Shown here one piece after another: positions 12,435 through 32,076 of a stretch of DNA of 64,000 nt; the first letter of the stretch is position 1, and the number at the start of each line of letters is the position of its first letter. The translations under genes were made by a program, and so were the position numbers. Where the stretch lies: the IMG/VR virus record IMGVR_UViG_3300010334_000023, positions 62,001-126,000 of that record, one strand, 5' to 3'. The notes under the pieces are model-generated. The model saw only the letters and a program-made list of their open reading frames with translations. It was not told where the DNA came from and did not search any database.

Positions 12435-12510
12435 GATATGTGCCTCCTATGTGTGCTTTCATGTGCCTAATTGTGCTATAGACAGCCCGCAACACCTGTT
12501 GCTGACTGAC

Positions 12511-12538
12511 AGTTTATTTATGCCGCAGCGATTGTCAA
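12511..12538 (-). promoter_or_regulatory. Overlapping sigma70 and late promoters of gp32
   Basis: TTGACA(12538-33)-16 nt-TAAACT(12516-11) with TAAATA at 12520-12515. Confidence 0.6.
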
Positions 12539-12596
12539 GTGTCAATCTGCTATCTAAGTTTTCAGTGGAGAATTGGATTGGTGACAGCCGCATGCA

Positions 12597-13619
12597 TTAC
12601 ATAATGCCGGCTAGTTCCTCTAGTCGCAAGAGCTCTTGATCCATCTCTGAACTAGGTACAGTGATGCGGTAACCATGGCTTACCAAATACCTAGCAGCAG
12701 TTTCTAACGCATCCATGTTGGGGACATCCGACTTCTCGCAACCACAAGTTTCGGCTAGCCTATCCCGCAATTCTATCACTTGTTCAGCTGGTGAACTCAT
12801 TGTGCTGCTGGCTAGCTTGGTAATGCCAGTGGCATAACCCTTGCTGCCACTGAGCCTCTTGCTTTCTTTGGCAAGTTGCTCTAGTGCACCCTTGACATGA
12901 AGACCAAGCTCTTGATCTTTGTTACGCATCAGCTTGTTAGCACGCTTGAGCTTGATGTAATCCTCGCTCATGCGCATGATAGCTTTAGCAGTCTGGTCAC
13001 CAAAACGACCATCGTTGGCAAGATGCCGTGCCATAGCCCTGGCGCCCGCTATATGAGCATGGGGATAAGCAAAGCGCTCGCCCATCTTGGTCTCTATGAA
13101 TATGTTCTTGATGTGGCGCCAACGACTGCCCTTCTTCTCTTCGTTCACGGGATCAGTATGGCGTATGATCAGCTTGCTATTGCCTATCTGCTGGTAACTG
13201 CTCTTGGTGCTACCGTAAGGCTTGCTGATATCGCGGCTCTCTTGGATGTTGTTCACAGCATCTTCCCTGGGATCAATGTCATGATCAAACTTATACCAGT
13301 TCACACTGATGTTTTCCTTGTCACCAACATTGACTTGCATGCTGTCCTTGATCTTGATGACTGTGTTAAAATCCTTATCGTTAACTAGATTAGGCGTCTT
13401 GATATCCATGTGGCTACTGGCATCCTCGTCATGCAGCGTCACTAATATGTTAAAGCTGTCCAGTTTTGGATCACTGCTTGGTATGGTAGCAAAGAATCTA
13501 GTGGCTTCATGTGGATCCATGGTCTTGCTGCCGCCTTTGTCAAACATCTGCGTGCGATAGCCGTTGCCTCGCAGTATGCCAAAGATCTTATCGCCTATGA
13601 TGTCCCAGTTGTGATTCAT
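12597..13619 (-). CDS. Hypothetical late protein, probably virion-associated
   Basis: 340-aa ORF; TAAATA 7 nt before ATG. Confidence 0.6.
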   Translation of the reverse strand: MNHNWDIIGDKIFGILRGNGYRTQMFDKGGSKTMDPHEATRFFATIPSSDPKLDSFNILVTLHDEDASSHMDIKTPNLVNDKDFNTVIKIKDSMQVNVGDKENISVNWYKFDHDIDPREDAVNNIQESRDISKPYGSTKSSYQQIGNSKLIIRHTDPVNEEKKGSRWRHIKNIFIETKMGERFAYPHAHIAGARAMARHLANDGRFGDQTAKAIMRMSEDYIKLKRANKLMRNKDQELGLHVKGALEQLAKESKRLSGSKGYATGITKLASSTMSSPAEQVIELRDRLAETCGCEKSDVPNMDALETAARYLVSHGYRITVPSSEMDQELLRLEELAGIM

Positions 13620-13636
13620 GATGCTATATTTAGCTG

Positions 13637-17327: not shown

Positions 17328-17810
17328 TTATTTAGCGTCGCTTTCAATTTCACCTAGCTGTTTGAGCAGCTCATTTCGGTCCATCATTGTAGCTTTGACA
17401 TCCAACGGATCATCGTCAGGTGATTTAGTTGTGCGGTCAAGCTTGAGCTTGTCTAGCTTCAGCTTCAGCATCTTCAGCTTCTTGTCCACCTTAGAGTTCC
17501 TAGCATCTACTGCTATCTTTAGCATCTGGCTGCTGCTACTGAATATCTCTCCAGCATGACGAATTTCAACATTCATACCGAGATCCTGTAGATCTTGATG
17601 TGCTTTGATAGCCATGTTAGCCAGTTCATCCATCTCACGATCATGGAGATCCTGTCCTCTTGCTGTGCTAAGCTGACGATCAATGTCATCAGCCATGGCC
17701 AATGCTGCTGCGATGTCCTCTTCGTTAGGCTGCGCCGGTATCTCTGCATCGGAACCTTCAACAGGTTCTAGCTCAAATGCATCTTCCAGTGTCTTGAATC
17801 TGTTGGCCAT
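17328..17810 (-). CDS. Hypothetical helical protein (terminase small subunit candidate)
   Basis: 160-aa coiled ORF coupled to gp4; function suggested only by size and position. Confidence 0.4.
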   Translation of the reverse strand: MANRFKTLEDAFELEPVEGSDAEIPAQPNEEDIAAALAMADDIDRQLSTARGQDLHDREMDELANMAIKAHQDLQDLGMNVEIRHAGEIFSSSSQMLKIAVDARNSKVDKKLKMLKLKLDKLKLDRTTKSPDDDPLDVKATMMDRNELLKQLGEIESDAK

Positions 17811-18262
17811 CAACGGGTCCTCTTGGTCTTGGTTTTGGGCTTAGTGATATATATGTCACTTTCAGTAAGGATCCTGAAGGTCATTCCGTTCTTCTTACAA
17901 TAGGTCATTGCCGCTGCCCATTTAGCTGTGTTGAGTATGAGGCTTACCTTGTCTCGCTTGCTCTTGGCATTCTCAACCATGGCTTCCTTGGCAGGTTTGA
18001 CTTCTACTATCTCTGCTCGCCTCTTGCCATTCTTGTCTTGGTATAGTATCATGAAATCTGGCACATATTGGCTGGGTTTGCCGGTTAGAGGATTTGTATA
18101 GGGTATGCGTATGCTCTCACTGGCCCACTGTATCACACTGGGGTGGCTGTCAAGAAAGTTCATCACAGTCAGTTCCCAGCTGCTACGGAACGTGACTTCC
18201 TGCTTGCCTATCAGCTTTGCTGGATTCTTCGGTATGAATCGCCCTTGGCTGTACTTAGACAT
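17810..18262 (-). CDS. gp4: Head completion nuclease (gp4/TnsA-like)
   Basis: G.F.PKNP.K, FRSSWE, WASE, Y.PDF, EVKP, AKW.AA. Confidence 0.88.
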   Translation of the reverse strand: MSKYSQGRFIPKNPAKLIGKQEVTFRSSWELTVMNFLDSHPSVIQWASESIRIPYTNPLTGKPSQYVPDFMILYQDKNGKRRAEIVEVKPAKEAMVENAKSKRDKVSLILNTAKWAAAMTYCKKNGMTFRILTESDIYITKPKTKTKRTR

Positions 18263-19424
18263 TGCTATAACCTTCTAGACATGCAGATAATTCTGGATTG
18301 ATCATTTTCAAAGATGTCCTTCTCAGGGAATCCAACCTATCATTGTATTCGCTGAACATGCTGAGCCACACCGGAAGCGGTATGGTAGCTGGCATGCTTA
18401 GATGATTAGTTATAGCCGATATCACAGACTTGTGACGCGGGTAGTCAGCAGATCTACGTGTATATGAATCTATCAGTGCTTGTTTATAGACAGTGGGTAG
18501 ATTGCGTGCGTCTAACATGGGCGGATGCTTACACAGTATCACAGAAAGCTTGCTGATGTGAGGGTTGAGTTCGCTATCTACCCAGTCTAAGAGGTCTAAC
18601 ATAGCATGTGCGTTATACAAGCTGAAGACTGAGGTTATTTTTGCCTTCACGCGAGCATTTTTCGCACAAATATCTCGTAGATTCTTGGTCACAGCCGAAA
18701 CCCTATCCCAGGTACTGTCGGATCTTATGTAATCATTCAGCTGACCAAACGCGTCTATGCTACAGTCTATCTTAACTTCGCGCAGCACAGAGAAGTATGA
18801 CTGCATCTCCTCGTTCAGGTCATGAGTCATGTTGCTGCTCATGTGCAGCTGTAAGCGAGAAATATTTCCGTGATTAGCAACTTGAATCAATGCTTCTATT
18901 ATGCGTGCTTGATGCATCATTGGTTCACCACCGAGGAACTGTAGTCTCTCTGTGTTCTTAGCAGTTTCTGCAGACAGATACCATCCAGATTCTCGCAAAC
19001 CTACCGATAGCTGTCCAAGGGATATAGCATCTGATAGCCAACTAGTCGAACTGGTTTGATTACATGATCTACATTTGATATTACAGATGTTGTTCAGATT
19101 TACATCCTGGCTCATCAACGTTGGTTCTGCGGAAAAATCCACACCTATGAGATCTGCAAGCTCGAATGACCATGTCCTATGGCTGTAACCCTTGACCTGC
19201 TCATTGAACTCGCAGGTTTTACAATAGCGATGTCCTTGACCCTGCTTGAATTGTTGCCGTAGATTTTCCATGTAATCTGTATGGATGTACCCATCAATAT
19301 CACATTCGGGAACACTATCCGGCCATTTGCAGCAGGGTTTTAACTGGCCATCGGTTTCAATACGACCGTGAAACCAAGGAAAAGCACAGTAAGGTCTGTT
19401 AGCTGTTTGAGATGGCTGCTGCAA
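18255..19424 (-). CDS. Radical SAM protein with N-terminal SPASM/twitch-like domain
   Basis: CAFPW..PCC..CKTC, then CNIKCRSC, GGEP, SIDA, YIRS. Confidence 0.88.
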   Translation of the reverse strand: MQQPSQTANRPYCAFPWFHGRIETDGQLKPCCKWPDSVPECDIDGYIHTDYMENLRQQFKQGQGHRYCKTCEFNEQVKGYSHRTWSFELADLIGVDFSAEPTLMSQDVNLNNICNIKCRSCNQTSSTSWLSDAISLGQLSVGLRESGWYLSAETAKNTERLQFLGGEPMMHQARIIEALIQVANHGNISRLQLHMSSNMTHDLNEEMQSYFSVLREVKIDCSIDAFGQLNDYIRSDSTWDRVSAVTKNLRDICAKNARVKAKITSVFSLYNAHAMLDLLDWVDSELNPHISKLSVILCKHPPMLDARNLPTVYKQALIDSYTRRSADYPRHKSVISAITNHLSMPATIPLPVWLSMFSEYNDRLDSLRRTSLKMINPELSACLEGYSNV

Positions 19425-21680: not shown

Positions 21681-22277
21681 TTAACCTGCTTGTGGACCGC
21701 TACCGCTAGCACGTACACGGCTTGGCATGATGTCTTGATCCTGCGTTGCGTTATCGTAGCGCACAGTCAGCGTGATCATCATCGATTCGCTGTTGCTATA
21801 GTCAAAGCTGTCATAGGCCACAGTCTCGAGATAGCAGCCTTCGAGATACCAGTTCTCGAGAACCCCACTGTCTGATCCATCTAAAGTTTCAATCTGAGTA
21901 GCAAACTTGTAGTTGATACCAGCAAGGAATGAAGTCTGTGTAAAGTGGTTCATCTGCTTCTGCAGCTGATACGATGTCAGGTAGCTTACGCTGTTTGTAA
22001 CATCATCGCGTACAGTGATTTCAATGCTCTGCCATTCTGGTTTCTGAGCCACATACATCACGTTGTTGTAGCTGTGGATCGGTGTGCTGTTGTGTTGGAT
22101 GCTGGGGCGTCCGCAGGTTGCTACCTGTGTGGTTAACGCGATAGCTGCATTCGGTGGTCCAAAACCCTGCATGCTCACCCTGAAGCGATATTTCAGCTTC
22201 GGCATGAGGATGCCACGCCCTGTGGTTCCTAATTGGGTCGGTACACCAAAACTCTGCAAGGTTGGGGTAAAGGCCAT
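21681..22277 (-). CDS. gp19: Tail tube protein
   Basis: PKLKYRFRV, KPEWQSIEITVRDD, W.LEGC, ITLTVRYD; TATAAATA at 22309-22302. Confidence 0.85.
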   Translation of the reverse strand: MAFTPTLQSFGVPTQLGTTGRGILMPKLKYRFRVSMQGFGPPNAAIALTTQVATCGRPSIQHNSTPIHSYNNVMYVAQKPEWQSIEITVRDDVTNSVSYLTSYQLQKQMNHFTQTSFLAGINYKFATQIETLDGSDSGVLENWYLEGCYLETVAYDSFDYSNSESMMITLTVRYDNATQDQDIMPSRVRASGSGPQAG

Positions 22278-22301: not shown

Positions 22302-22309
22302 TATTTATA
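22302..22309 (-). promoter_or_regulatory. T4-type late promoter (representative of ~20 copies)
   Basis: TATAAATA or TAAATA upstream of late genes at 160, 1417, 3579, 13627, 17329, 21616, 22302, 27914, 32107, 34214, 34692, 35889, 37899, 37908, 39593, 47627, 50819, 51920, 53266, 55069, 58407, 58450. Confidence 0.85.
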
Positions 22310-22334: not shown

Positions 22335-23462
22335 TCAGATCAGCTTGCGGCTCTTTGGTATCTTGCTGTCTGCGCTGCTCACACAGGCGCTGCTAATGCA
22401 GGGCATTGGACCATCAAATAGCTTGAATCCGGTCTCAATGTAACCAAGTGGTTTATCGGCGCAACTATAGCTGCGCTTTATAGCTCCATCAGGCTCGCGT
22501 ATGATGATACTACGAAACCCACTTTCGCAATCCCAGCCATTGAATTGATTGAAATTGAAAGCATTGAATCGTTCAGCCTGGTCCATGTACCATTTCTTGC
22601 CAGTATCGTCTTCAAATTCTACCTGCATGATCTGCGGTACTGATGCGTCATCGCCGTTTGACACACTCATCTTTGCCATGCTGATCTTGGGCTTTGGCCG
22701 CTCTACCTTGGATTTAACCGTGGTAAAATCGCGCTGCGGCATGCCGTTGTGCAGTGTAGCAAGCTGATCCTTGGTATATCCTTCTACTACCTTGCTGGCA
22801 GTTGGATCGCTCTGTGGTTTTAGTGTTACGTTGATACCGCGACCCAGGAAGTATTCTGCTTCAGCATAGAGAGTATCAAACCATTCTGGCACCATGACGG
22901 TGTTCACGGTTACCTGTATGTCGTTCTCCTGCAGGAAAACCAGTTTGTCAGCAAACTTCTCTGTGTGACCTTTGAGATCACCTTGCTTGATCCCCTGTTC
23001 TCGATGCCAGCTAGCCGTCACGCTCACACGGTGCAGATCTTTGGTAGCATCAACGTATTTCTCGAACCAACGCAGCCCTTGGCTGATATTTGAAGTCATG
23101 TGCACGCTCTGATAGTTGCAGTTAGCAGTATCTTGGCTATAGTGCTCTAGCAGTCTTAGATAATCAGGATATACAGTCGGTTCGCCTCCGCTGAAACTGA
23201 AATGAAAGCTATTGTAACCTCGTTCTCTGCTCTGTCGCTTGATCTCATCCATGGTCATGAGGTTAAGCTCTATGGGACGATAATCTTTGGTGTTGCTGCG
23301 TGCGTATGGCCAGCAGTAGCTGCAGTTGTAGTTGCAGTATCGACCAATCAACCAGCTCACGCAGAATATATCACGATATAGCAGGGTACGCTGACCAAAT
23401 CTGGTTATCTTGTCGAATGGTATCTTGGTGAAATCATAGGAGCTAACCGCATCATTTGCCAT
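22335..23462 (-). CDS. Radical SAM protein with C-terminal Cys cluster
   Basis: CNYNCSYC, SGGEPT, TSN; C-terminal CESG..C..C...C. Confidence 0.88.
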   Translation of the reverse strand: MANDAVSSYDFTKIPFDKITRFGQRTLLYRDIFCVSWLIGRYCNYNCSYCWPYARSNTKDYRPIELNLMTMDEIKRQSRERGYNSFHFSFSGGEPTVYPDYLRLLEHYSQDTANCNYQSVHMTSNISQGLRWFEKYVDATKDLHRVSVTASWHREQGIKQGDLKGHTEKFADKLVFLQENDIQVTVNTVMVPEWFDTLYAEAEYFLGRGINVTLKPQSDPTASKVVEGYTKDQLATLHNGMPQRDFTTVKSKVERPKPKISMAKMSVSNGDDASVPQIMQVEFEDDTGKKWYMDQAERFNAFNFNQFNGWDCESGFRSIIIREPDGAIKRSYSCADKPLGYIETGFKLFDGPMPCISSACVSSADSKIPKSRKLI

Positions 23463-24012
23463 TTACGTTCTCCTGTATGGGATCTATGCTTAGCTCGTTT
23501 ATGTTTAGGTTAGCAGGTTGGTCAACCATCCATTTCACATACTGTGCCGCTTGATCAAGCTCCATGCAGGTCCTCGAAGGATGCTTGTGCTGCACGTTAC
23601 TAAGCGAGCCCACGCTCAGCAATGACACCTTGGGTCCACCTCCCCAGGTGCTCAATAATCCAAGGCTGTTGCAGAAATCTCGCAGTGATTTCTTTTCATG
23701 TTGATAGGTCCAATCGCTGCCTTTTGAAGTGCGATCCGCGGTGCTACCAATGCTAATGATATGCAGCTGATGTTTGTGATCTCGAGCAACTGCGTAGACT
23801 TCTCGGAGCAGCAGCGTCTGTTGAAACTGCCACAACGCACTGTTATTGATGAAAACATCGTATTCCAGTGCCAGCTGTGCTAGATCCCTGCGTCGTTGAT
23901 CTTTATCTAGATCCCAGCCATTTGCTCTACTAACGAAGCTAGCATCTGGCCAAATGCCGTGCATTGACTGTGCTAAACCCTTAGTTGGATTACCAGTAAT
24001 CAATATCTTCAT
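23452..24012 (-). CDS. Short-chain dehydrogenase/reductase
   Basis: ILITGNPTKGLA, FINNS, ISIGS, YxxxK (YQHEK). Confidence 0.8.
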   Translation of the reverse strand: MKILITGNPTKGLAQSMHGIWPDASFVSRANGWDLDKDQRRRDLAQLALEYDVFINNSALWQFQQTLLLREVYAVARDHKHQLHIISIGSTADRTSKGSDWTYQHEKKSLRDFCNSLGLLSTWGGGPKVSLLSVGSLSNVQHKHPSRTCMELDQAAQYVKWMVDQPANLNINELSIDPIQENVNGK

Positions 24013-25325
24013 AGGTAACCCTCCATCTCTGGTACCACATCTACTAATTTCTGCGATCTAATAGCATCCATCTTGGCTGTGAATGATACAAAAATATTCC
24101 AATGAGCCTCATGTAGATCCCCACTGGTCATGTATTCGATCACGCTACTGCAGATGTTCTTGCTGCTAGACACCACGTTCTCAGGAAAACCCTGATCCAC
24201 CACCCAATCATGGAAGTCATTGAATCTATTGGTCACTAGGTCTTTGAGATCTTGTGGCAGCACCCTTATGTTGAGATGTTTGGGGTGATGTGCTACATGA
24301 TGCGTCACGATTGGTTTCTTGATGGTGTTATTGAACTTGTTGAGACCGCTCTGTCCAAGCTTCCATCTCATGAAATCTGGCATGTGCAGCACGTTGTAGG
24401 CAGTCACGGTGTAAGCGAACCAGGCCTGGACGTTTTCAGGGGCTTCGTCGACCCTGTATATGTTTCGCAAAACCTTGCTCCAATCTGACGGATATCTTTG
24501 ATATTCCTGCATAGCACCGTATCCATCTATGCTAGCTCCTATCTGTATGGTCTTGAAATGAGTCCACAGATCGAGCACTCTGCTTGGTATGCTGGTCATG
24601 TTGGTGTTATATTCAACTACCATGTTGCCAGCTGCTCCATTCTCTATGCAGCGTTCTAGGAATTCATAGTGTCGCTCTATCAGCAGAGGTTCGCCTCCTG
24701 CCATGTAGACATGCTGCACGTTGCCAGCATTGGCTTCGATCTGCTGCCAGAAACTCTCGCTGTTGTGCCATCCATAGCTGTTGCTTATCCATTTGCCATT
24801 TGAGCGATGCATATGCTCGCGACCGTGCGTGTCGTTGAACCAGTCAACATCATACAGCTTGTTCCAGTCATCATACCAACCAGTGCTGTCCTGAGGTCCG
24901 CACATGCGGCATGCCAAGTTGCAGAGGTTTCCAAATCGTAGATCATAATATACCACAGGCAACGCTTCTGTATCGATGCTGCCATCTTCTGCGGTATGGG
25001 CTAACATTTTAGTACGCTGGTTCTTCCATCTATATGTCTCATATTTCCGACGGCTATCTAAGCCAGCGTCTTCCTCGCTCTTGCACCTGCCACATTCCTC
25101 GCTCCATATGCCCTGCATCATGTTCTTTCGCATGCCTATCAACAAAGCGCTGTTGCGAGCAGAGACCAGTTCGTCAGATGCTGCGTTATAGGGTGTACCA
25201 TCTGGTTTGCGAATCACGCCCTTGTTCTGCGTGATGTTGGCCTGGCAACATACCCTGAGATCGCCGTTGCTCCTCACTGCTTGAAAGTTCCAGGGAATAG
25301 GGCACCACGTGTCTGACTTGCTCAT
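24009..25325 (-). CDS. Radical SAM protein with N-terminal SPASM/twitch-like domain
   Basis: CPIPW, RVCC, CGRC, CNLACRMC, AGGEP, YNTN, ASIDG. Confidence 0.9.
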   Translation of the reverse strand: MSKSDTWCPIPWNFQAVRSNGDLRVCCQANITQNKGVIRKPDGTPYNAASDELVSARNSALLIGMRKNMMQGIWSEECGRCKSEEDAGLDSRRKYETYRWKNQRTKMLAHTAEDGSIDTEALPVVYYDLRFGNLCNLACRMCGPQDSTGWYDDWNKLYDVDWFNDTHGREHMHRSNGKWISNSYGWHNSESFWQQIEANAGNVQHVYMAGGEPLLIERHYEFLERCIENGAAGNMVVEYNTNMTSIPSRVLDLWTHFKTIQIGASIDGYGAMQEYQRYPSDWSKVLRNIYRVDEAPENVQAWFAYTVTAYNVLHMPDFMRWKLGQSGLNKFNNTIKKPIVTHHVAHHPKHLNIRVLPQDLKDLVTNRFNDFHDWVVDQGFPENVVSSSKNICSSVIEYMTSGDLHEAHWNIFVSFTAKMDAIRSQKLVDVVPEMEGYL

Positions 25326-26221
25326 ATCCTGCCCTGCTTCCTGGCCTTGACAAGTCCGCGTATGCCCAATCGGTTGTGATCACCGACGGCAAAATCATTC
25401 CATTCTGGTCCACCGAGAGCAATGTGCATGCACTTGGTAGGCGTGATACCAACTTCGGCACAGACTTCAATCTGCGATTGCCTATATTTGGCAGGAATGA
25501 AATCAGGCGTTTTCAATTCCTGCATGAAGTATATGCCAACCTTGGCAGCTCCGAGCACTGTGTGATTGTATCTGTTCTGCTGGCATATTGGCAGATCATC
25601 GTCAATGTTGCTGTAACGAATGCCACTGCGTATGTGTCCTGTACCTGTGCCTTTGGTAAGACTAAAGCTAACGCTCTCTATAGCTGGGTGATCCACGCTC
25701 AGTTGAACATCCACACAGGTGCCTATGTATGCGCAGTCAACTATGACCGGAACCTTGAGATCTGCGCATCTGTCCAGCATGGCATAGAATCCCTGCGGTA
25801 CATCCCCTGTTGTCGCATGAGGTACGCTGACTATGACATAGTCGCCCTGCTCTATCGGACCGTCCTCTATGTGCTTCCAATCCTTAACGATGCGTGCGTG
25901 ATAGGCATATTCACCTCGATACATGCGCAAACGCCTAGAAGCGTGTCGGTGGTAAGCTTCATCAAAGCTCTGAGTGGTACCATTTATCAGATGATGCTGT
26001 TTGAAACGTTCAAGCCCTATAACCTTACTAAGACGCATGTTTCCAAGGTAGAGCTTATAGGTATCTAGATATTCTAACCTGCAATCTAATGGATCGCCGC
26101 CATCCTGGAACCATTCTTGCCACGGCAGTGATTTGAAAAGATCCACGAACCGTACGTCATAAACAGCAGCAGTCTTCTTGCTGATCATGCCGCTATCTAC
26201 TAGTGATTGCTTGTCCATCAT
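25322..26221 (-). CDS. PLP-dependent enzyme (aminotransferase fold type I-like)
   Basis: NGTTQSF, VIVDCAY, SFSLTKG....IRSG. Confidence 0.7.
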   Translation of the reverse strand: MMDKQSLVDSGMISKKTAAVYDVRFVDLFKSLPWQEWFQDGGDPLDCRLEYLDTYKLYLGNMRLSKVIGLERFKQHHLINGTTQSFDEAYHRHASRRLRMYRGEYAYHARIVKDWKHIEDGPIEQGDYVIVSVPHATTGDVPQGFYAMLDRCADLKVPVIVDCAYIGTCVDVQLSVDHPAIESVSFSLTKGTGTGHIRSGIRYSNIDDDLPICQQNRYNHTVLGAAKVGIYFMQELKTPDFIPAKYRQSQIEVCAEVGITPTKCMHIALGGPEWNDFAVGDHNRLGIRGLVKARKQGRI

Positions 26222-27582
26222 CTGTTAGTATCCTTTATCACGTCATAGAATTCTGGCAGGCTATCCTGCATGCTCTCAGATCGTATTTTATCCAACCTAT
26301 CAGTGAATCTCCAAAACTTAGGCATGAGCTCTGCCTGATCCGCAGCTAGCATAAAACGTTGCCACTGATCGAGATGCTGCGTGATACCAGCTATCAGCTC
26401 ATCTCGGCGAGCATGATCATCGTCATAGAGTTCGCAAGCAAGCTTGATCAGCTCAGGCAATCTGCGGGCAAAATGCTCTACTACTTTCTGTTTTTCTGCC
26501 GGTGGCAAGGTTCTCGCATTTAGATGCTTTGGTCCATACAGAGGATGAAAGAATATCAGCGGACTGTTTGGTGTGAAACCAAACCTCTTGTACTTTCGGC
26601 GCATGAACCATTCCAGAGTGTCAGGTATGTACCAGATGTTGTATATCATGATCGTGCTGGCGATCCAGACCACAAAATTGATATCTGTGGCAGAATCTAT
26701 CCTATCTAGGTTCTCTTCGATCATGTGCCATCGGCAGGGGTGTCGTATGTAGTCATTGACCGGTCCAATGCCGTCAACGCTGGCTCCGATCCTAACTTCT
26801 CTAAAATGCCGCCACAGATCCCAGGCCACCGGTGGTATCTTTACTACGTTGCTGTTGTATTCGATGATGATGTTCTTGCTGATACCCATATCGATGCAGC
26901 GTTCGAGGAACTCCCACTGTTGATCAATGAGCATGGGTTCGCCACCAACTGTGTGTATGTGCTGTATGTTTTTGGCATTCCTAGAGATGTGATCCCAGAA
27001 CAGAGGTGACTCATACCAAGTGTAACCATCTGTGTCTGGTACTAATCTGCCACTATCATCTCTTGACAGTGTTACCTTTCCAAAGCTTTCATCATATTGG
27101 TGAGTGTTCCACAGGGCTACATAGTCTTCGTACCAAAAATTGCTTTCTGTTGGGCTGCACATCCTGCATTTCAGGTTACACTTGTTGCCAAATCTCACTC
27201 CGTAGTGCATGACTGGGCAAGACTCATTGGATATCTGTCCATCATCACAGGTCAGCTGCTTGGCCATATCAACAGTGAACCTATCAGACCACAGCGTGGT
27301 TTCTGTCTGGTTCCTGCTTATCAAACCACCTTTGCTTTCATTCTCGCAGCGTCTACAAGCCGGATTCCATCGGCCTGCCAGCATGTCCAAACGTATCTGC
27401 CGCAGTAAGGAGCTGTTGCGAGCATCTTCTATCATGTCTAACGTGGCGTTGAAGGTGCTACCGTTTGATTTGCGTAAGAGCCCATTATCAGCACCCTGCT
27501 GGCTATGCGAGCACACGCGCATGTCTCCGTTATTGCGGATATCTAGGCTGATCCAAGGCAGTGGGCACCAATTACATGACAT
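26218..27582 (-). CDS. Radical SAM protein with N-terminal SPASM/twitch-like domain
   Basis: CPLPW, CRRC, CNLKCRMC, GGEP, YNSN, ASVDG; paralog of 24009..25325. Confidence 0.9.
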   Translation of the reverse strand: MSCNWCPLPWISLDIRNNGDMRVCSHSQQGADNGLLRKSNGSTFNATLDMIEDARNSSLLRQIRLDMLAGRWNPACRRCENESKGGLISRNQTETTLWSDRFTVDMAKQLTCDDGQISNESCPVMHYGVRFGNKCNLKCRMCSPTESNFWYEDYVALWNTHQYDESFGKVTLSRDDSGRLVPDTDGYTWYESPLFWDHISRNAKNIQHIHTVGGEPMLIDQQWEFLERCIDMGISKNIIIEYNSNVVKIPPVAWDLWRHFREVRIGASVDGIGPVNDYIRHPCRWHMIEENLDRIDSATDINFVVWIASTIMIYNIWYIPDTLEWFMRRKYKRFGFTPNSPLIFFHPLYGPKHLNARTLPPAEKQKVVEHFARRLPELIKLACELYDDDHARRDELIAGITQHLDQWQRFMLAADQAELMPKFWRFTDRLDKIRSESMQDSLPEFYDVIKDTNR

Positions 27583-27617
27583 GTGCTAGTATATCACAGC
27601 TACTGGCTGCTCCATAA

Positions 27618-27908
27618 TCAAGCGTGGCCAATATGCCCATAGACTTCAATGTCAGTGAGCTTGCTCACCTCAGTGATCTGGTCCTTTATCAACCGATTTA
27701 CCAGCTTTAGATTCTGCTTTCTGCTGGCAGGATCTAACTGACCAATGATGTGTCCTAGATTCAAGCTCAGCACTGTGAGCAGGATCTCATTGGCCAGCTC
27801 TGAGCTCGTATCTGTTTCCAGCTTGCTATGCATTCCAGCTAGATAGGTGTATAGGGCCGCGCTGATATCATTCTTGAAAGAGTCAGCAATCTTATCTTGA
27901 TCAGTCAT
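27618..27908 (-). CDS. Hypothetical protein
   Basis: 96-aa ORF, TAAATA 5 nt before ATG. Confidence 0.6.
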   Translation of the reverse strand: MTDQDKIADSFKNDISAALYTYLAGMHSKLETDTSSELANEILLTVLSLNLGHIIGQLDPASRKQNLKLVNRLIKDQITEVSKLTDIEVYGHIGHA

Positions 27909-27954
27909 GACAATATTTAACGGTCAACCATGCAGGTTAGCAATGCTCATGCAA

Positions 27955-27979
27955 AGATAAACCGGGCATTTAGCCCGGT
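27955..27979 (-). terminator. Terminator after sheath gene
   Basis: ACCGGGC-5 nt-GCCCGGT followed by T-rich tail on the minus strand. Confidence 0.6.
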
Positions 27980-27987
27980 CCATCAGC

Positions 27988-30900
27988 TTATACGTTGATG
28001 TTGTTGCTACCGTTTGGTAGCGGATCTGCGTCATTCAACACCCTGATTGGTATGTAGATGAACTCGATCGCCTTTTCTGGCTTGATAGCTATATCAACCC
28101 AAAGCTCGTTGCGATCGATCCTAATCGGTGTGTTGTTGCTGCTATCGCACACGACTGAGAAGTCGTAGAGCGCACGCAATCCAACCAAGTTACCCATGAA
28201 GCTGTTAAACGCTATGGTAACTGCCTGCCTGGTCTGAGCGTCGTTTGGCTCAAACAAGAACGGCTGTGCCAACTGCCTTAGGTTGTAAACCAAGTAGTTG
28301 ATCAGGCGCGCAACATTGACTCTGTCCAGGCTTGTGGTGATTGGATCCAAGGTCTTCTGTCCATATACAACCAAACCACGATTTGGTATGAACGTGATCG
28401 GATTGATCTTGTTCACATACAGCACGTCGCGCTGTCCTTGGTTTAGACTGACTGGCTGATATGTACCGTCTGACTTGAGGTAACCAACGCTCAATGCGCC
28501 AGCAACCAAACCACGATTGAAACCAGCTGGAGCAAACCAAGGATAAGCTACTTGGTCATTGTAAGCATATACCGTGAGTGCCATGGTGCTTGGCGGCACA
28601 AACACTTGGTTTCCGTCCAAGTTCACTTCCAGTGCCCAGGGATAGTAAACTGCTGCGTATGATGTGTGGGTTATCAAACCATCAATGCTGTCATAAGCTG
28701 CGTTGTTGGCATTGGTAGCCCACTGCTGCAGGCTAGTGGTATCAGCTGGTAGCTCTCCAGGAGGATCTGCTAGGATGAAAGCTATCTGTTGTATGTCAAC
28801 ATTGAGCAGGTTCATCTCAGCCAAGCATTCTATGTAACCCGGTGTTGCTATCAAGTTGTAGAAGATCGAATCACCGCGTATGGCTTGGTTGCTAGCAAGC
28901 GAAGCATTAAGCGCTCTAAAGACCATAGCACGCTGCGCATCTGGTCCCATGTAAGGGGTGCCATTTGGACGGTTACCGCTAGCTGTGACCCAGCAATCCG
29001 GATCATAACCTTCAGAAGTGTTCACATCTGGGAAATAATCCATATAGTACTGCTTGACATTGTAGGTGCTATAACGAGTGTTGAACAGCAACATACCAGC
29101 TGGATAAAGCTCTGCGTTAGGCGCATCGCTATCCACATAGTTGCTGACTACCATCGCGCTAGGAGCTTGGCTGCCATTGGTCTTGCCATTGTTATTGTAT
29201 CGCGCGTCAGTGAATATGATGCCCGAAGGACTGCTGTGATTGGTGTTATCGATCAGTGTCCATGATCCAGATGATCCATCGTAGCGGTATAGCACTGGAT
29301 AGGGTGTCACGCTGCTGTCTACCCAGATGTCGTTGGTAACCAATGGACTAAGGTCGCTCTGTGTGCTAGGCATGCTGCCATCTATGATTGGACCATTTGG
29401 ATCTGTAGCTGGATAGGCATTCCTATAACCCTGCCAGATCTGGCCGCTGCCGACCATAATATCAACCTGTAGGTAGGTGTTATACCATAGCGTACCGTCT
29501 GCCGGAGGTCCTACTGGATTGGTGGTGCTCGGTGTATACATCAGTGTTACCCAAGCAGAACCGTCCCATTGATAAAGAACTGTCTTGGCCGTAGCAGGCA
29601 TGTCGCCGTCATTGTTATAACGAGCATACACTGTACCGTAGGTCTTGCTAGAACCAAAAGCAGCATTGGCTACAGCATCGCTGCTGTACATAGGCACAGT
29701 GTTGGTCAGAGGATTGATATTCTGCTCCACCCATATCGTACCATTGTACTTCTTAACTACCATGTTAGCGCCGCGATCGGCTGGTGTGGTATTGATCCAC
29801 ACGTTGGTAGCAGCAGTCTGTGCCAGTGTGCTAGGTACTGTAAGAGATGGATAGTAACCCTGATAAACCATCTGTCGTCCAAACACATAGCCAACTTGTA
29901 TACCTGCGCTGTTAAGAGGAGTTCCGCTGATATCCTTCAGTATGAACTGTGTACCGTTTGTGTTGGTGATTGTGAGATGGTTGCCAGTAGACACGCTAGC
30001 CACGATCGGACCACTTGGGAAAGCAGCATTGATAGCAGAGACCACACCAGCCAACGTGTTGTTAGGTGATGCCGGCACGTAAATCGTGGTAGCTATTCCT
30101 GTGCCAGGATTGATGCTGAATGTGTCAGCAGTTAGATATGCCATGCTAACAGTGAATGTAGCGTTGGTGCCGCTGCCCCCGGTGACGCTCACCGGATTGG
30201 TAGGTGCCACCGTGTAGTTGCCAGGATTGGTCACGGTCACTGTGCCAACACCCCAGCCAATAGTCACTGTGGCATTAGTACCGTTGCCGCTGGTTGATGA
30301 AGGTGTCACAGGATTAGCTGGGACGTTGGTGATGTGCTGTCCGGGCTGTCGTATGGTCAAGGTAACAATAGAGCCGCCGCCTCCGATGCTGGCCACTTCT
30401 AGTATGGTCGGAGTCACATAGGCTGGACCATCAAAAGTAAGCGTATCGCCTTGAGCATAACCAGTTCCAGTAGCAGATATGCTAGCCGCTACAGCCTGTA
30501 TGCTAGCAACAGTCAGCACACCCGTTACGCTGTGGGTACCACCAACGACATTAAGCGTGTCTCCTGGTGCGTAACCAGCACCAGGCGCAACTACAACCGG
30601 CGCTGGCTGTGTTTGTCCTGCTATGTTGCCGTTTGATATCTCAAGCGTAGCAGCTGTGAATGTTGGATTAGCCACAGTACCTGTCACTGCTCCATAGTAA
30701 GTCTGCGTGGTTGGCATACCTGCAGTCTGCCATGGGTGTGTGGTATTTGTTTCTGTGGTTATGTCATGGAAGAAAATGTCAGTAGCATCATAGTTGGTGA
30801 TTACCAAGAAGTTGCTGCTACCAGAAGTGGCAATGCTAGCCAAGGCATTGAAACTATTGGCATCAAGAACCGAATTGATCGAAGTTACAAAGCTGCTGAG

Positions 30901-32076
30901 AGAAGTTCCCGCCACAGTGATGGTCACAGGCACTGCATCACCAATGCTTATAGTGCATTGGTTGCCTATAGTGAAGGTTGGATTGCTGACTGTGCCCTGC
31001 ACCACACGCGGTGCTGCTTCGCGCCATCCCCAACCTGGATAATCCATGTCAGTGCTGCCAACCAAGAACCACCAAGCGTCTGTGTTACCGTTAAGCGTGG
31101 TCTGTTCGATCTTCTGCCAGATCTTGTTCTCCATTAATTCGGTAGTCGGATCAGTGCTGTATGCATCAACTATGAACTCACCAACTGTGCCGTAAGCATG
31201 TATTGGTAATATGGTGTTAGTTGGCTCCGGAGTCATAAATCCGATATCCTCTAACACGTATATGTTAGAATAAAGCAGATCAATCATCGTGGTGATATCA
31301 GTGCCGGTGATGCGTAGATAGTAGAGATCTTCTATCGTAGCTACTGTTGGATCAGGCTTGCCGGTGCGAGCATAGATCGTAGCGCTAATGCCAGAGTTAT
31401 GTATGGCGTTGTTGTTGATAGCACTTGCTACATCACTGAGGCTCATGCCAACTGTCATGGGCACTGTAGTTCCATTAATCACCAAGTTACCAACATGAGT
31501 AACGGCAGGAGTGCTGGCACTGGTCAGTCCAACTGATGCCTGTACCATTATCTCGAGATCAGTTGACTTTGAAAGTGTCAACGGAGTCTTGGCGCTCCAG
31601 CTCAATGCGCTGTTAGCGTTCCCATTGCTGCTGAATATGCCCCAAGTGGTGTTTGCTGTGTCAAGCCAATATTGGTTGAGTGAAGGAGGACCTGCTGGTT
31701 CAGTGGTGCTTGGCACCATCTGCTTTAGATCAACATCCGCACGCAATACATATGCAGTGTTTGCTATACCGAGATATTGATATGCTGTGAACAGACCCAG
31801 CTCATTCAGCTGATTACCATAGTCAGGCGTGCCAGCGGTGGTGTAGAAGGTTGGAGTTCCAAACGTCTGCAGCAGATCACGTTGGCTGCTGATTAGATAA
31901 AGTTGGTTAGCATTAGCAGCAGTAGTACCGGGCGCGTAAACACCTGAGCTACCAGGTTGTAGCTTATTAGCTGCCGTAGCAATGAGAATGAGCGGGACGG
32001 TTCCAGCACCTGCGCTAGCATATACGCTTTCATCTGTGACTGTGACGCTTACGCCGGGTGATACTAGGGTTGCCAT
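27988..32076 (-). CDS. gp18: Tail sheath protein with large inserted domains (1362 aa)
   Basis: LVSPGVSV, WFAPAGFNRG, YGQKTL, RVNVARL, FEPND, IKP.KAIEFIYI. Confidence 0.95.
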   Translation of the reverse strand: MATLVSPGVSVTVTDESVYASAGAGTVPLILIATAANKLQPGSSGVYAPGTTAANANQLYLISSQRDLLQTFGTPTFYTTAGTPDYGNQLNELGLFTAYQYLGIANTAYVLRADVDLKQMVPSTTEPAGPPSLNQYWLDTANTTWGIFSSNGNANSALSWSAKTPLTLSKSTDLEIMVQASVGLTSASTPAVTHVGNLVINGTTVPMTVGMSLSDVASAINNNAIHNSGISATIYARTGKPDPTVATIEDLYYLRITGTDITTMIDLLYSNIYVLEDIGFMTPEPTNTILPIHAYGTVGEFIVDAYSTDPTTELMENKIWQKIEQTTLNGNTDAWWFLVGSTDMDYPGWGWREAAPRVVQGTVSNPTFTIGNQCTISIGDAVPVTITVAGTSLSSFVTSINSVLDANSFNALASIATSGSSNFLVITNYDATDIFFHDITTETNTTHPWQTAGMPTTQTYYGAVTGTVANPTFTAATLEISNGNIAGQTQPAPVVVAPGAGYAPGDTLNVVGGTHSVTGVLTVASIQAVAASISATGTGYAQGDTLTFDGPAYVTPTILEVASIGGGGSIVTLTIRQPGQHITNVPANPVTPSSTSGNGTNATVTIGWGVGTVTVTNPGNYTVAPTNPVSVTGGSGTNATFTVSMAYLTADTFSINPGTGIATTIYVPASPNNTLAGVVSAINAAFPSGPIVASVSTGNHLTITNTNGTQFILKDISGTPLNSAGIQVGYVFGRQMVYQGYYPSLTVPSTLAQTAATNVWINTTPADRGANMVVKKYNGTIWVEQNINPLTNTVPMYSSDAVANAAFGSSKTYGTVYARYNNDGDMPATAKTVLYQWDGSAWVTLMYTPSTTNPVGPPADGTLWYNTYLQVDIMVGSGQIWQGYRNAYPATDPNGPIIDGSMPSTQSDLSPLVTNDIWVDSSVTPYPVLYRYDGSSGSWTLIDNTNHSSPSGIIFTDARYNNNGKTNGSQAPSAMVVSNYVDSDAPNAELYPAGMLLFNTRYSTYNVKQYYMDYFPDVNTSEGYDPDCWVTASGNRPNGTPYMGPDAQRAMVFRALNASLASNQAIRGDSIFYNLIATPGYIECLAEMNLLNVDIQQIAFILADPPGELPADTTSLQQWATNANNAAYDSIDGLITHTSYAAVYYPWALEVNLDGNQVFVPPSTMALTVYAYNDQVAYPWFAPAGFNRGLVAGALSVGYLKSDGTYQPVSLNQGQRDVLYVNKINPITFIPNRGLVVYGQKTLDPITTSLDRVNVARLINYLVYNLRQLAQPFLFEPNDAQTRQAVTIAFNSFMGNLVGLRALYDFSVVCDSSNNTPIRIDRNELWVDIAIKPEKAIEFIYIPIRVLNDADPLPNGSNNINV

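What the first reader, a model, noticed from the sequence alone, without database searches (positions are those of the whole stretch)
22335..27600. Radical SAM-PLP-radical SAM-SDR-radical SAM cassette splitting the sheath and tube genes
Seen: five overlapping, co-oriented genes (three CxxxCxxC enzymes, one PLP enzyme, one SDR). They start from a TGn-TATACT extended -10 placed 5 nt before ATG 27582 and end just before the gp19 late promoter. Established: genes 18 and 19 are adjacent in T4, and radical SAM + PLP aminotransferase + NAD(P) oxidoreductase is the enzyme logic of deoxy/amino-sugar and small-molecule tailoring. In two of the enzymes the auxiliary Cys domain lies N-terminal to the radical SAM core, the reverse of canonical SPASM order. 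Inference: an uncharacterised phage biosynthetic pathway making a modified sugar, a protein or nucleic acid modification, or a metabolite.
Basis: partly seen in the sequence, partly recalled or inferred. Interest (0 to 1): 0.72.

Follow-up and report, generated by a model that had tools for sequence, protein, structure and literature searches.

The report
Phage radical-SAM sugar-tailoring gene cassette
A freshwater jumbo phage carries, between its tail sheath and tail tube genes, five coupled enzyme genes that belong to a widespread, uncharacterised radical-SAM system shared by large aquatic phages and predatory Bdellovibrio-like bacteria, and that most likely makes an unusual amino sugar.

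Summary
Five overlapping minus-strand genes (22335-27582) lie between a 1362-aa tail sheath gene and the tail tube gene. They encode two N-terminal-twitch radical SAM enzymes (NCBIfam NF033640), a compact fold-type-I PLP enzyme, a short SDR, and a third radical SAM enzyme with four invariant C-terminal cysteines. None matches MoaA, QueE or NrdG.

The genes co-occur widely. 48 of 52 non-redundant loci holding the PLP gene also hold N-twitch radical SAM genes. Both gene junctions around the PLP gene exist elsewhere as natural fusion proteins. Viral loci carry a median of 9 radical SAM genes per 20 kb.

Among cellular genomes the PLP family turned up only in Bdellovibrionota. There it sits in operons with a UDP-sugar dehydrogenase, an NDP-sugar epimerase/dehydratase and GT2 glycosyltransferases. 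The same phage also encodes GT2-like paralogues, methyltransferase-like proteins and a StrB1-like amidinotransferase at other loci.

Best reading (about 0.5): oxygen-independent tailoring of a sugar or glycan, with radical oxidation coupled to PLP transamination and SDR reduction. Product and acceptor are unknown.

The position is not special, because related jumbo phages carry other cargo in the same sheath-tube gap. The proposed extended -10 promoter is unsupported. Comparable radical SAM clusters were noted in Campylobacter phage CP220 and in pelagimyophages but never characterised.

The parts
27988..32076 (-). Tail sheath gene (1362 aa); upstream neighbour of the cassette
   Evidence: phrog_10581 tail sheath, E = 1.3e-238
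27953..27980 (-). Terminator-like hairpin (GC-rich stem of 7-8 pairs, 5-nt loop, T-rich tail) right after the sheath stop codon
   Evidence: Read directly from the sequence. The consensus scan did not list it, so it is tentative.
27618..27908 (-). 96-aa ORF of unknown function, between the sheath gene and the cassette
   Evidence: ORF list. No Pfam, NCBIfam or PHROG hit. A 71%-identical copy lies in relative L016, but no hit was found in relatives L018/L019.
27588..27596 (-).
   Evidence: Present but not enriched: 4 sites in the window against 1.8 expected.
26218..27582 (-). rSAM_A: radical SAM enzyme with an N-terminal twitch domain (454 aa)
   Evidence: NF033640, 326 bits against a cut-off of 170. 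Pfam Radical_SAM plus a SPASM-like stretch at residues 6-80. CNLKCRMC at residue 135. Found fused to the PLP domain in other phages.
25322..26221 (-). Compact fold-type-I PLP enzyme (299 aa), class I/II aminotransferase-like
   Evidence: pLDDT 95.2. Foldseek best matches are CobD and HisC. D162, K190 and R198 are invariant. The profile hits aminotransferase 3if2 over the PLP motifs.
24009..25325 (-). rSAM_B: second radical SAM enzyme with an N-terminal twitch domain (438 aa); 36% identical to rSAM_A
   Evidence: NF033640, 377 bits. Paralogy shown. The family profile's N-terminus matches the BtrN twitch domain.
23452..24012 (-). Short classical SDR-like oxidoreductase (186 aa)
   Evidence: Profile A2 hits SDR structures, best E = 2.6e-13. 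G7, Y103 and K107 are invariant; R29, N56 and S90 are nearly invariant.
22335..23462 (-). rSAM_C: radical SAM enzyme (375 aa) with an N-terminal core and four invariant C-terminal cysteines; very highly conserved
   Evidence: Pfam Radical_SAM, 52 bits. Alignment A3 has 69% mean column identity, with C312, C334, C355 and C360 invariant. More than 100 metagenomic clusters are at least 64% identical.
22302..22309 (-). TATAAATA (T4-late-promoter-like) with an AGGAG ribosome-binding site, ahead of the tube gene
   Evidence: Four sites in the window against 0.85 expected, all shortly upstream of an ATG.
21681..22277 (-). Tail tube gene (198 aa); downstream neighbour of the cassette
   Evidence: phrog_4542, E = 3.3e-52. 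54% identical to the PA5oct tube protein.
18255..19424 (-). rSAM_D: a fourth N-twitch radical SAM gene, between the tube-module genes and the head-closure gene
   Evidence: NF033640, 214.6 bits. The neighbouring ORF 17810-18262 is phrog_218 head closure.

Best explanation
The five genes are one translationally coupled module of a larger, conserved, uncharacterised radical-SAM tailoring system. Large aquatic T4-superfamily and jumbo myophages share this system with Bdellovibrionota.

**Proposed chemistry (inferred, not shown).** The substrate is a sugar: a nucleotide sugar supplied by the host, or a sugar already attached to a glycan.
1. An N-twitch radical SAM enzyme uses a 5'-deoxyadenosyl radical to abstract a carbinol hydrogen. 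It oxidises a secondary alcohol to a ketone without oxygen, as BtrN does.
2. The adjacent PLP enzyme, which is fused to this enzyme in other phages, transaminates the ketone to an amine.
3. The second N-twitch enzyme, rSAM_C and the probably NADPH-dependent SDR carry out further redox tailoring, such as epimerisation, deoxygenation or keto reduction.
4. Genes elsewhere in the same phage would then amidinate, methylate and transfer the product to an unknown acceptor. These are the StrB1-like amidinotransferase, the methyltransferase-like proteins and the GT2-like paralogues. The acceptor could be the host envelope or virion proteins.

The cassette sits in a cargo slot of the late structural module and is probably expressed with or near the tail genes.
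For: **Shown: family assignments and intact catalytic motifs.**
- rSAM_A and rSAM_B are NF033640 members.
- The PLP enzyme has the aminotransferase fold with invariant Asp, Lys and Arg.
- The SDR keeps its YxxxK motif.

**Shown: functional coupling.**
- The gene overlaps are 4, 4, 4 and 11 nt.
- Natural NTwi-PLP fusions (813-826 aa) and PLP-NTwi fusions (703-715 aa) occur, two independent locus groups each. They reproduce both junctions of the window.
- An N-twitch gene is adjacent or fused in 41 of 56 PLP genes, and within 10 kb in 48 of 52 non-redundant loci.

**Shown: sugar context in cells.**
- Bdellovibrio sp. HCB2-146 has overlapping genes for a nucleotide-sugar dehydrogenase (TIGR03026, 453 bits), an NAD epimerase/dehydratase, a 303-aa unknown and the PLP orthologue, which is 51% identical.
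- In a Bacteriovoracaceae genome the PLP gene is followed by two Pfam GT2 genes.
- Another genome has GT2 and ArnT/PMT_2-like genes beside nine radical SAM genes.

**Shown: the same phage carries matching partner genes.** These are four GT2-like genes, two methyltransferase-like genes, one further radical SAM gene and one more N-twitch gene at C1:153676-162740. An amidinotransferase lies beside a GT4 gene at C1:3280-4428.

**Leads from resemblance.**
- The N-terminal domain profile matches the twitch domain of BtrN, the 2-deoxy-scyllo-inosamine dehydrogenase (E about 1e-5).
- The amidinotransferase family's best structure hit is StrB1, the inosamine-phosphate amidinotransferase (E = 5.6e-45).
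- BlsE and DesII appear among the sequence and fold neighbours.

**Weak support for expression.** Two lake metatranscriptomes hold 100%-identical contigs that bridge all four gene junctions.
Against: - The PLP enzyme is not a DegT/DnrJ/EryC1 sugar aminotransferase. Its fold neighbours are the amino-acid-type enzymes HisC and CobD.
- The 216 kb of this phage that are available (about 42% of the genome) hold no NDP-sugar epimerase/dehydratase, DegT or nucleotidyltransferase gene.
- The best solved-structure hit of the N-twitch core is the peptide maturase SkfB (E = 1.5e-12). Most SPASM/twitch enzymes act on peptides (from established knowledge).
- The GT2-like and methyltransferase-like labels rest on automatic Atlas names and short motifs only. 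Their profiles hit no solved structure.
- No substrate, product or acceptor is known. No family member has been characterised, as far as four literature searches show.
- DNA carry-over in the RNA libraries cannot be excluded.
Confidence: 0.5

Rival explanations
1. Post-translational modification of proteins or peptides. The radical SAM enzymes would cross-link, epimerise or oxidise residues of virion proteins (sheath, tube, fibres) or of a ribosomal peptide. The PLP enzyme and the SDR would process the oxidised residue.
For: - The best structure hit of the N-twitch core is SkfB. Weak NCBIfam hits go to PapB, mycofactocin and other peptide maturases.
- The PLP fold is of the amino-acid type.
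- The cassette and rSAM_D both sit inside the late tail/neck module.
- Asp/Asn beta-hydroxylase-like genes co-occur in 11 locus groups.
- In pelagimyophages, radical SAM cassettes lie in the host-recognition cluster with tail fibres (PMC7029224).
Against: - No RRE/PqqD domain was found in any of the proteins.
- No conserved small precursor ORF exists. The 96-aa ORF was not found in close relatives L018/L019.
- The cellular orthologues sit in nucleotide-sugar and GT2 operons.
- In other phages the clusters can lie far from structural genes. In G153 the cluster is at 160-181 kb and the capsid gene at 85 kb.
Confidence: 0.2
2. Synthesis of a free small molecule, such as an aminocyclitol-, aminoglycoside- or nucleoside-like metabolite, made during infection.
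For: - There are resemblances to BtrN (twitch domain), StrB1 (amidinotransferase) and BlsE.
- A 2025 cyanophage paper labels a similar trio of PLP enzyme, inosamine amidinotransferase and radical SAM enzyme as 'antibiotic synthesis genes' (PMC12801897).
Against: - None of the neighbouring families scanned against Pfam or NCBIfam proved to be a cyclitol synthase, an inositol-pathway enzyme, or an export or resistance gene.
- The many GT2 and GT2-like genes, and an ArnT/PMT_2-like gene in cellular loci, point to a glycoconjugate.
- The many paralogous radical SAM enzymes per locus fit the tailoring of a polymer better than a single small product.
Confidence: 0.12
3. Hypermodification of phage DNA. 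The enzymes would act on a modified base or on a sugar attached to DNA, to evade restriction.
For: - Phage thymidine hypermodification pathways use radical SAM and PLP enzymes (from memory of Lee et al. 2018; not checked here).
- The phage has many glycosyltransferase-like genes, and a ThyX gene lies directly after the second cluster.
Against: - No ThyA-type hydroxymethylase was found in the 216 kb available.
- The families occur in chromosomal polysaccharide-type loci of Bdellovibrionota.
- No DNA-binding or base-exchange enzyme is among the conserved neighbours.
Confidence: 0.1
4. Generic auxiliary metabolism. The radical SAM enzymes would merely boost host cofactor or anaerobic metabolism, as suggested for Campylobacter phage CP220.
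For: Timms et al. 2010 proposed this for the 11-12 radical SAM genes of CP220 and CPt10 (PMC2853527).
Against: - No gene reaches the cut-off of any cofactor family such as MoaA, QueE, NrdG, PqqE or NirJ.
- Conserved coupling to the PLP enzyme, amidinotransferase and GT genes indicates a dedicated pathway.
Confidence: 0.03

Closest known systems
NCBIfam NF033640, N_Twi_rSAM (twitch domain-containing radical SAM protein)
   Same: rSAM_A, rSAM_B and rSAM_D score above the curated cut-off over the full model length. They have the N-terminal four-cysteine domain followed by the CxxxCxxC core.
   Different: The family is a named sequence model only. Literature searches here found no characterised member or known substrate.
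BtrN with BtrS of butirosin 2-deoxystreptamine biosynthesis (twitch radical SAM dehydrogenase followed by a PLP aminotransferase)
   Same: The N-twitch domain is homologous to the BtrN twitch domain. A radical SAM enzyme is coupled, even fused, to a PLP aminotransferase-fold enzyme. This fits an alcohol-to-ketone-to-amine logic.
   Different: - The twitch domain is N-terminal here and C-terminal in BtrN.
- The PLP enzyme is HisC/CobD-like, not of the DegT family like BtrS (BtrS family from memory).
- No 2-deoxy-scyllo-inosose synthase is present.
- The reaction has not been tested.
StrB1 inosamine-phosphate amidinotransferase (streptomycin pathway)
   Same: A co-occurring family is clearly of this fold, with the His-Cys catalytic pair conserved. 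It is found in 18 of 52 locus groups and once in this phage.
   Different: It lies about 80 kb from the cassette in this phage. Its acceptor amine is unknown.
Arn (L-Ara4N) lipid A modification pathway: Ugd, ArnA, ArnB, ArnC, ArnT
   Same: In Bdellovibrio the PLP orthologue follows a UDP-sugar dehydrogenase and an extended SDR in one operon. GT2 and ArnT/PMT_2-like genes occur in another genome. This matches the Arn logic for building a cationic sugar.
   Different: Radical SAM enzymes are not part of Arn. The aminotransferase family differs. No formyltransferase or deformylase was seen.
Radical SAM clusters of Campylobacter phages CP220/CPt10 and of pelagimyophage host-recognition clusters
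   Same: - CP220 has four or five radical SAM genes of the co-occurring c2 family, an amidinotransferase of the same family, two GT-A genes and a PAP2 phosphatase (PMC2853527).
- Pelagiphage Mosig has c2, c7 and PLP-family members.
- All are unexplained accessory clusters in T4-superfamily phages.
   Different: - CP220 has no N-twitch member above the cut-off and no PLP-family or SDR-family hit in the stretch examined.
- No published function exists for these clusters (PMC2853527 and PMC7029224).

Membership tests
Radical SAM superfamily (PF04055) | Pfam score above the gathering cut-off, plus a CxxxCxxC cluster motif | tested here: met
   Scores of 41.8, 30.2 and 52.1 bits against a cut-off of 29.5. 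One CxxxCxxC motif in each protein.
NF033640 N_Twi_rSAM | Full-length match above the curated cut-off of 170 bits | tested here: met
   rSAM_A 326 bits and rSAM_B 377 bits; rSAM_D 214.6 bits. rSAM_C scores only 35 bits and is not a member.
NF033640 N_Twi_rSAM | Twitch-type cysteine domain placed N-terminal to the radical SAM core | tested here: met
   C8, C78 and C81 are invariant and C26/C27 nearly invariant in 20 sequences. Profile positions 5-85 match the BtrN twitch domain, E about 1e-5.
SPASM/twitch radical SAM enzymes (canonical C-terminal order), for rSAM_C | C-terminal cysteine-rich auxiliary-cluster domain | tested here: inconclusive
   Four invariant C-terminal cysteines, but no Pfam SPASM hit. 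Fold matches to anSME, CteB, MoaA and BlsE are weak, with TM scores of 0.37-0.48.
Fold-type I PLP enzymes, class I/II aminotransferases (PF00155) | Aminotransferase fold with Schiff-base Lys, pyridine-binding Asp and phosphate-binding Arg | tested here: met
   Foldseek probability 1.00 to CobD, HisC and many aminotransferases. D162, K190 and R198 are invariant.
Fold-type I PLP enzymes, class I/II aminotransferases (PF00155) | Pfam score above the gathering cut-off | tested here: not met
   No Pfam hit at E <= 0.01. Only 332 cluster representatives out of 1.84 billion match at E <= 0.001, so this is a discrete, divergent family.
DegT/DnrJ/EryC1 sugar aminotransferases (PF01041) | Sequence or fold membership | tested here: not met
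   No Pfam hit. The top structural neighbours are HisC, CobD and class I/II enzymes, not the DegT type.
Classical short-chain dehydrogenases/reductases | Rossmann glycine motif, catalytic Ser and the YxxxK motif | tested here: met
   G7 and G12, S90, Y103 and K107 are conserved. The profile hits more than 60 SDR structures, best E = 2.6e-13. At 186 aa the protein is unusually short, and the single sequence gets no Pfam adh_short hit.
   For rSAM_C: MoaA 31.5 bits against 284, QueE 18.8 against 260, NrdG 23.6 against 131.
RiPP maturase systems | RRE/PqqD-like recognition domain and a conserved precursor peptide gene | tested here: not met
   No such domain was found in the Pfam or NCBIfam scans. 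No small ORF is conserved next to the cassette.
Phage thymidine/cytidine DNA hypermodification systems | Pyrimidine hydroxymethylase (ThyA family) in the genome | tested here: not met
   No PF00303 match in the 216 kb available, which is only about 42% of the genome.

The most novel reading that the evidence does not exclude
Large phages and predatory Bdellovibrio-like bacteria share a dedicated, oxygen-independent radical chemistry toolkit. It comprises arrays of up to 16 radical SAM genes per 20 kb, bifunctional radical SAM-PLP enzymes, an amidinotransferase and their own Fe-S assembly helpers. With it they would build a cationic amino- or guanidino-modified decoration directly on their cell-attacking surface structures, namely virion tail or fibre proteins and predator fibres. 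This would be a new class of glycan or protein modification that tunes host or prey recognition.
Probability: 0.15. Interest if true: 0.85.

Novelty: new variant of a known kind. Interest (0 to 1): 0.6.

Why it matters
- **Unassigned enzymes.** The N-twitch radical SAM family, its HisC-like PLP partner and the near-invariant rSAM_C have no known reaction. Yet they are abundant in freshwater and marine metagenomes, with thousands of clusters.
- **Large investment by phages.** Some large phages devote a large part of a 20-kb stretch to them. They add a nucleosidase that could clear the 5'-deoxyadenosine by-product, plus Fe-S cluster assembly proteins.
- **A testable hypothesis.** The natural radical SAM-PLP fusions suggest a new bifunctional route for oxidising and then aminating an unactivated position without oxygen.
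- **An evolutionary link.** Among the cellular genomes searched, the system is shared only with Bdellovibrionota, and the viral and bacterial sequences are interleaved in the tree. This points to repeated exchange between two kinds of bacterial killers.
- **An old puzzle.** Knowing the product would explain a 15-year-old question: why T4-like phages such as CP220 and the pelagimyophages carry so many radical SAM genes.
- **Practical entry points.** A cultured Bdellovibrio (HCB2-146) and a cultured Vibrio phage (K566) carry related genes, so the question can be tested directly.

Tried and rejected
- **DNA similarity to isolated phages.** A DNA-level search of the cassette against 50,697 phage records found nothing. 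tblastn of rSAM_C also found nothing.
- **Protein similarity to isolated phages.** tblastn of the PLP protein found only pelagiphage Mosig, weakly.
- **Solved structures.** A single-sequence phmmer search of rSAM_B against PDB sequences found nothing. Profiles were needed.
- **Fold of rSAM_C.** The model (pLDDT 81.6) matched viperin, CteB, anSME, MoaA, BlsE and DesII about equally, with TM scores of 0.37-0.48. The fold therefore gives no substrate clue.
- **Complex prediction.** The rSAM_A plus PLP job returned 'no answer' with a score of 0.00. This is no evidence either way.
- **Co-occurring families c6 and c7.** Their profiles hit no solved structure. Their GT2-like and methyltransferase-like labels remain leads from Atlas names and motifs.
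- **Literature.** Searches for 'N-terminal twitch', 'N_Twi_rSAM', and radical SAM with Bdellovibrio or with twitch and UDP found nothing on this family.
- **Canonical sugar and DNA-modification genes.** The phage's 216 kb hold no NDP-sugar epimerase/dehydratase, DegT, nucleotidyltransferase or ThyA-type hydroxymethylase gene.
- **Exact insertion point of rSAM_D.** I compared the 160-aa neighbouring ORF with PA5oct gp285. There was no detectable similarity, so only the position before the head-closure gene is claimed.
- **The extended -10 promoter.** Rejected as unsupported. The motif is not enriched, and a -10 element 5 nt from the ATG would imply a leaderless mRNA.

Full report
**What is in the window.**
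The window is bases 62001-126000 of a 216,498-bp IMG/VR virus record. CheckV rates the record about 42% complete. Near-identical DNA occurs in many freshwater and lake metagenomes.

The tail tube protein is 54% identical to that of Pseudomonas jumbo phage PA5oct. It is 46-50% identical to those of the roughly 470-490 kb phages Phosso and Atu_ph07. This is therefore a jumbo myophage.

Between the 1362-aa sheath gene (27988-32076) and the tube gene (21681-22277) lie six minus-strand ORFs. The first is a 96-aa ORF of unknown function (27618-27908). These five overlap by 4, 4, 4 and 11 nt. GC content does not differ from the flanks.

**Identity of the five proteins.**
- *rSAM_A (454 aa) and rSAM_B (438 aa).* Both are full-length members of NCBIfam NF033640, 'twitch domain-containing radical SAM protein', with 326 and 377 bits against a cut-off of 170. 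They are 36% identical paralogues.
- *Their N-terminal domain.* In an alignment of 20 family members, C8, C78 and C81 are invariant, C26/C27 is nearly so, and the core CxxxCxxC is invariant. The profile's N-terminal 80 positions match the C-terminal twitch domain of BtrN (4m7s/4m7t, E about 1e-5). The core matches SkfB, ChlB, BlsE and viperins.
- *The 299-aa protein.* It has no Pfam, NCBIfam or PHROG hit. With a 37-sequence alignment it folds at pLDDT 95.2 into a fold-type-I PLP enzyme. Its best structural matches are threonine-phosphate decarboxylase CobD, histidinol-phosphate aminotransferase and other class I/II aminotransferases. D162, K190 (in SLTK) and R198 are invariant. It is not of the DegT sugar-aminotransferase type. 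The family is small and discrete, with 332 cluster representatives among 1.84 billion.
- *The 186-aa protein.* It is a truncated classical SDR. Its profile hits SDR structures with a best E of 2.6e-13, YxxxK is invariant, and the glycine motif, the NNAG-like Asn and the catalytic Ser are conserved. A conserved Arg after strand 2 hints at NADPH use; that last point is an inference.
- *rSAM_C (375 aa).* It has an N-terminal radical SAM core and four invariant C-terminal cysteines. It is strikingly conserved: 69% mean column identity across jumbo phages, marine phages and bacteria, and more than 100 metagenomic clusters at 64% identity or above. Its predicted fold resembles viperin, CteB, anSME, MoaA, BlsE and DesII about equally, which gives no substrate clue.

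**Co-occurrence elsewhere.**
The PLP family retrieved 66 viral loci and 18 genome loci. Three look-ups of homologue-encoding contigs added five more loci. After removing redundancy there are 52 locus groups.
- N-twitch radical SAM genes lie within 10 kb of the PLP gene in 48 of the 52 groups.
- They are directly adjacent or fused in 41 of 56 PLP genes.
- Both junctions of the window exist elsewhere as single polypeptides: NTwi-PLP proteins of 813-826 aa and PLP-NTwi proteins of 703-715 aa, each in two independent locus groups. There are also 1412-aa proteins with two N-twitch domains.
- Viral loci hold a median of 9 and up to 16 radical SAM genes per 20 kb.
- Four of five host contigs examined (205-457 kb) encode a T4-type Gp23 capsid protein.
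- Close relatives about 70% identical keep the sheath-then-cassette order (L016, L018, L019).

**Other families that travel with these genes.**
- A second radical SAM family of about 354 aa (38 groups).
- An amidinotransferase whose best structure hit is StrB1, E = 5.6e-45 (18 groups).
- A GT2-like family with a DGDN motif (12 groups).
- A class-I-methyltransferase-like family (12 groups).
- Asp/Asn-hydroxylase-like proteins (11 groups).
- An MTAN-like nucleosidase (7 groups).
- A PP-loop ATPase (6 groups).
- In some loci, NifU-like and DUF59-like Fe-S assembly proteins. This last identification rests on my reading of the sequences printed, not on a database hit.

The window's own genome holds these partners at other places. 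Four GT2-like genes, two methyltransferase-like genes, one gene of the 354-aa radical SAM family and a further N-twitch gene lie at C1:153676-162740. The amidinotransferase lies at C1:3280-4428, next to a GT4 glycosyltransferase. A fourth N-twitch gene, rSAM_D (18255-19424), lies just before the head-closure gene. The cassette is therefore one piece of a dispersed set, not a complete pathway.

**Cellular distribution and context.**
In one representative genome for each of 185,579 prokaryotic species, all 18 loci with a relative of the PLP protein are in Bdellovibrionota. This search used two peptide patterns, so it is not exhaustive.

N-twitch genes above the cut-off occur in 31 of 151 sampled genomes of that phylum, with up to 11 matches per genome. 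They occur in none of 14 control model genomes. A maximum-likelihood tree of the PLP family interleaves viral and bacterial sequences, with at least five label changes forced by well-supported branches. This indicates repeated exchange; the direction is unresolved.

The cellular neighbourhoods are the best functional clue.
- In Bdellovibrio sp. HCB2-146, four overlapping genes encode a nucleotide-sugar dehydrogenase (TIGR03026, 453 bits, nearest to UDP-glucose 6-dehydrogenases), an NAD-dependent epimerase/dehydratase, a 303-aa unknown and the PLP orthologue. A second dehydrogenase/epimerase pair lies beside another N-twitch gene.
- In a Bacteriovoracaceae genome, two Pfam GT2 genes follow the PLP gene.
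- In another genome, nine radical SAM genes and the PLP gene adjoin four GT2-type genes and a weak PMT_2 (ArnT-like) hit.

**Mechanistic reading.**
*Shown:* intact catalytic motifs; tight genetic coupling and fusion of an N-twitch radical SAM enzyme with the PLP enzyme; and a nucleotide-sugar and glycosyltransferase context in cells.

*Inferred:* a BtrN-like radical oxidation of a sugar hydroxyl to a ketone, then PLP transamination, then further radical and SDR redox steps. Amidination, methylation and transfer would follow, catalysed by enzymes encoded elsewhere.

This is the logic of the BtrN/BtrS, StrB1 and Arn (Ara4N) pathways, as far as I recall them. Membership in those families is not met. 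The domain order is permuted, the aminotransferase belongs to a different subfamily, and the available part of the phage has no canonical NDP-sugar genes. I put this reading at about 0.5.

The rivals and my estimates are:
- Protein or peptide modification, 0.2. For it: the SkfB-like core, the amino-acid-type PLP fold, the position in the late structural module and the hydroxylase partners. Against it: no RRE and no precursor.
- A free aminocyclitol-like metabolite, 0.12.
- DNA hypermodification, 0.1. No ThyA-type hydroxymethylase was found.
- Generic metabolic help, 0.03.

**Position and expression.**
- *The gap is a cargo slot.* The sheath-tube gap carries cargo across this phage lineage: a homing endonuclease in PA5oct, and four to six genes including a Ro-like RNA-binding protein in Atu_ph07 and Phosso. 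'Splitting genes 18 and 19' therefore carries no functional message by itself.
- *Terminator.* A terminator-like hairpin follows the sheath stop codon. It is my own reading and was not listed by the scan.
- *Late promoter.* TATAAATA plus AGGAG precede the tube gene. The four TATAAATA sites in the window all lie shortly upstream of an ATG.
- *Extended -10.* The TGATATACT motif before rSAM_A exists but is not enriched.
- *RNA evidence.* Two lake metatranscriptomes contain 100%-identical contigs tiling all five genes and bridging all four junctions. Depths are similar to those over the tube gene. This is compatible with polycistronic transcription, but DNA carry-over is not excluded.

**Relation to the literature.**
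- Timms et al. 2010 noted 11-12 radical SAM genes, an amidinotransferase and sugar transferases in Campylobacter phages CP220 and CPt10, and could only guess at a metabolic benefit (PMC2853527). My profiles show that the CP220 genes belong to the same 354-aa radical SAM family and the same amidinotransferase family.
- Zaragoza-Solas et al. 2020 mention radical SAM cassettes in pelagimyophage host-recognition clusters (PMC7029224).
- A 2025 cyanophage paper calls a related trio 'antibiotic synthesis genes' (PMC12801897).
- None of these assigns a function. No paper found here mentions the N-twitch family.

**Verdict.**
The cassette is a new variant of a known kind of enzyme logic, built from families that have names but no known reactions.

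Interest is moderate to high (0.6). Three features would surprise specialists: the scale of the radical SAM arrays, the radical SAM-PLP fusions, and the sharing between phages and Bdellovibrionota. Cultured carriers make the question testable.

Noticed in passing
window 18255-19424 (-): A fourth N-twitch radical SAM gene (214.6 bits) sits inside the tail/neck module. It overlaps its neighbours and lies just before the head-closure gene. It is a second, separate placement of this family among late structural genes.
   Followed up: partly
outside the window: G000:C1:153676-162740 (locus L100:2177-11244): A second cluster holds four GT2-like paralogues (one of them a 615-aa double-length protein), two methyltransferase-like genes, a 368-aa radical SAM gene and a 464-aa N-twitch gene. 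A ThyX gene follows directly.
   Followed up: partly
outside the window: G000:C1:3280-4428 (locus L101): A StrB1-like amidinotransferase lies beside a GT4 glycosyltransferase, a calcineurin-like phosphoesterase and a T4 Rnl1-type RNA ligase.
   Followed up: partly
window 27988-32076 (-): The tail sheath protein is unusually long at 1362 aa, against about 880 aa in PA5oct and about 1090 aa in Atu_ph07 and Phosso. Only its C-terminal 600 residues match sheath profiles well.
   Followed up: no
window 5688-7313 (-): A phage-encoded GroEL-like chaperonin (phrog_5725, E = 3e-174). UvsX-like recombinase, gp32-like SSB and large terminase genes lie nearby (10232-15223).
   Followed up: no
viral loci L026, L034, L080 (first 4 kb of each): Next to the radical SAM arrays these phages carry NifU-like and DUF59-like Fe-S assembly proteins, ClpP and ClpS. 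This is my reading of the sequences, not a database hit. Seven locus groups carry an MTAN-like nucleosidase (Pfam PNP_UDP_1) that could remove the inhibitory 5'-deoxyadenosine.
   Followed up: partly
viral loci, e.g. L047:4739-5017, L056:5968-6273, L022:19377-19733: Small stand-alone cysteine-rich proteins of about 80-120 aa recur in the arrays, sometimes in several copies. They share a motif of the type C..(W)PCC(W/H)...C..C. They look like detached auxiliary-cluster domains.
   Followed up: no
viral loci L031-L039, L062 (e.g. L032:4270-8508): Proteins of 1412-1417 aa carry two complete N-twitch radical SAM domains behind an unassigned 520-aa N-terminal region.
   Followed up: no
L019:13884-14459 and L020:4690-5256 (about 70%-identical relatives of the window): In these relatives, rSAM_C is followed by a 190-aa protein that looks like a cupin or Asp/Asn hydroxylase, where the window has the tube gene. 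In L020 it is on the same strand; in L019 it is on the opposite strand. The cargo therefore differs even between close relatives.
   Followed up: no
L104 (Vibrio phage K566, record positions 161548-168284): A cultured 255-kb Vibrio phage carries a cluster with four N-twitch-like radical SAM genes; a fifth lies about 10 kb further on. Two of the five are above the family cut-off. This offers an experimental handle on the family.
   Followed up: partly
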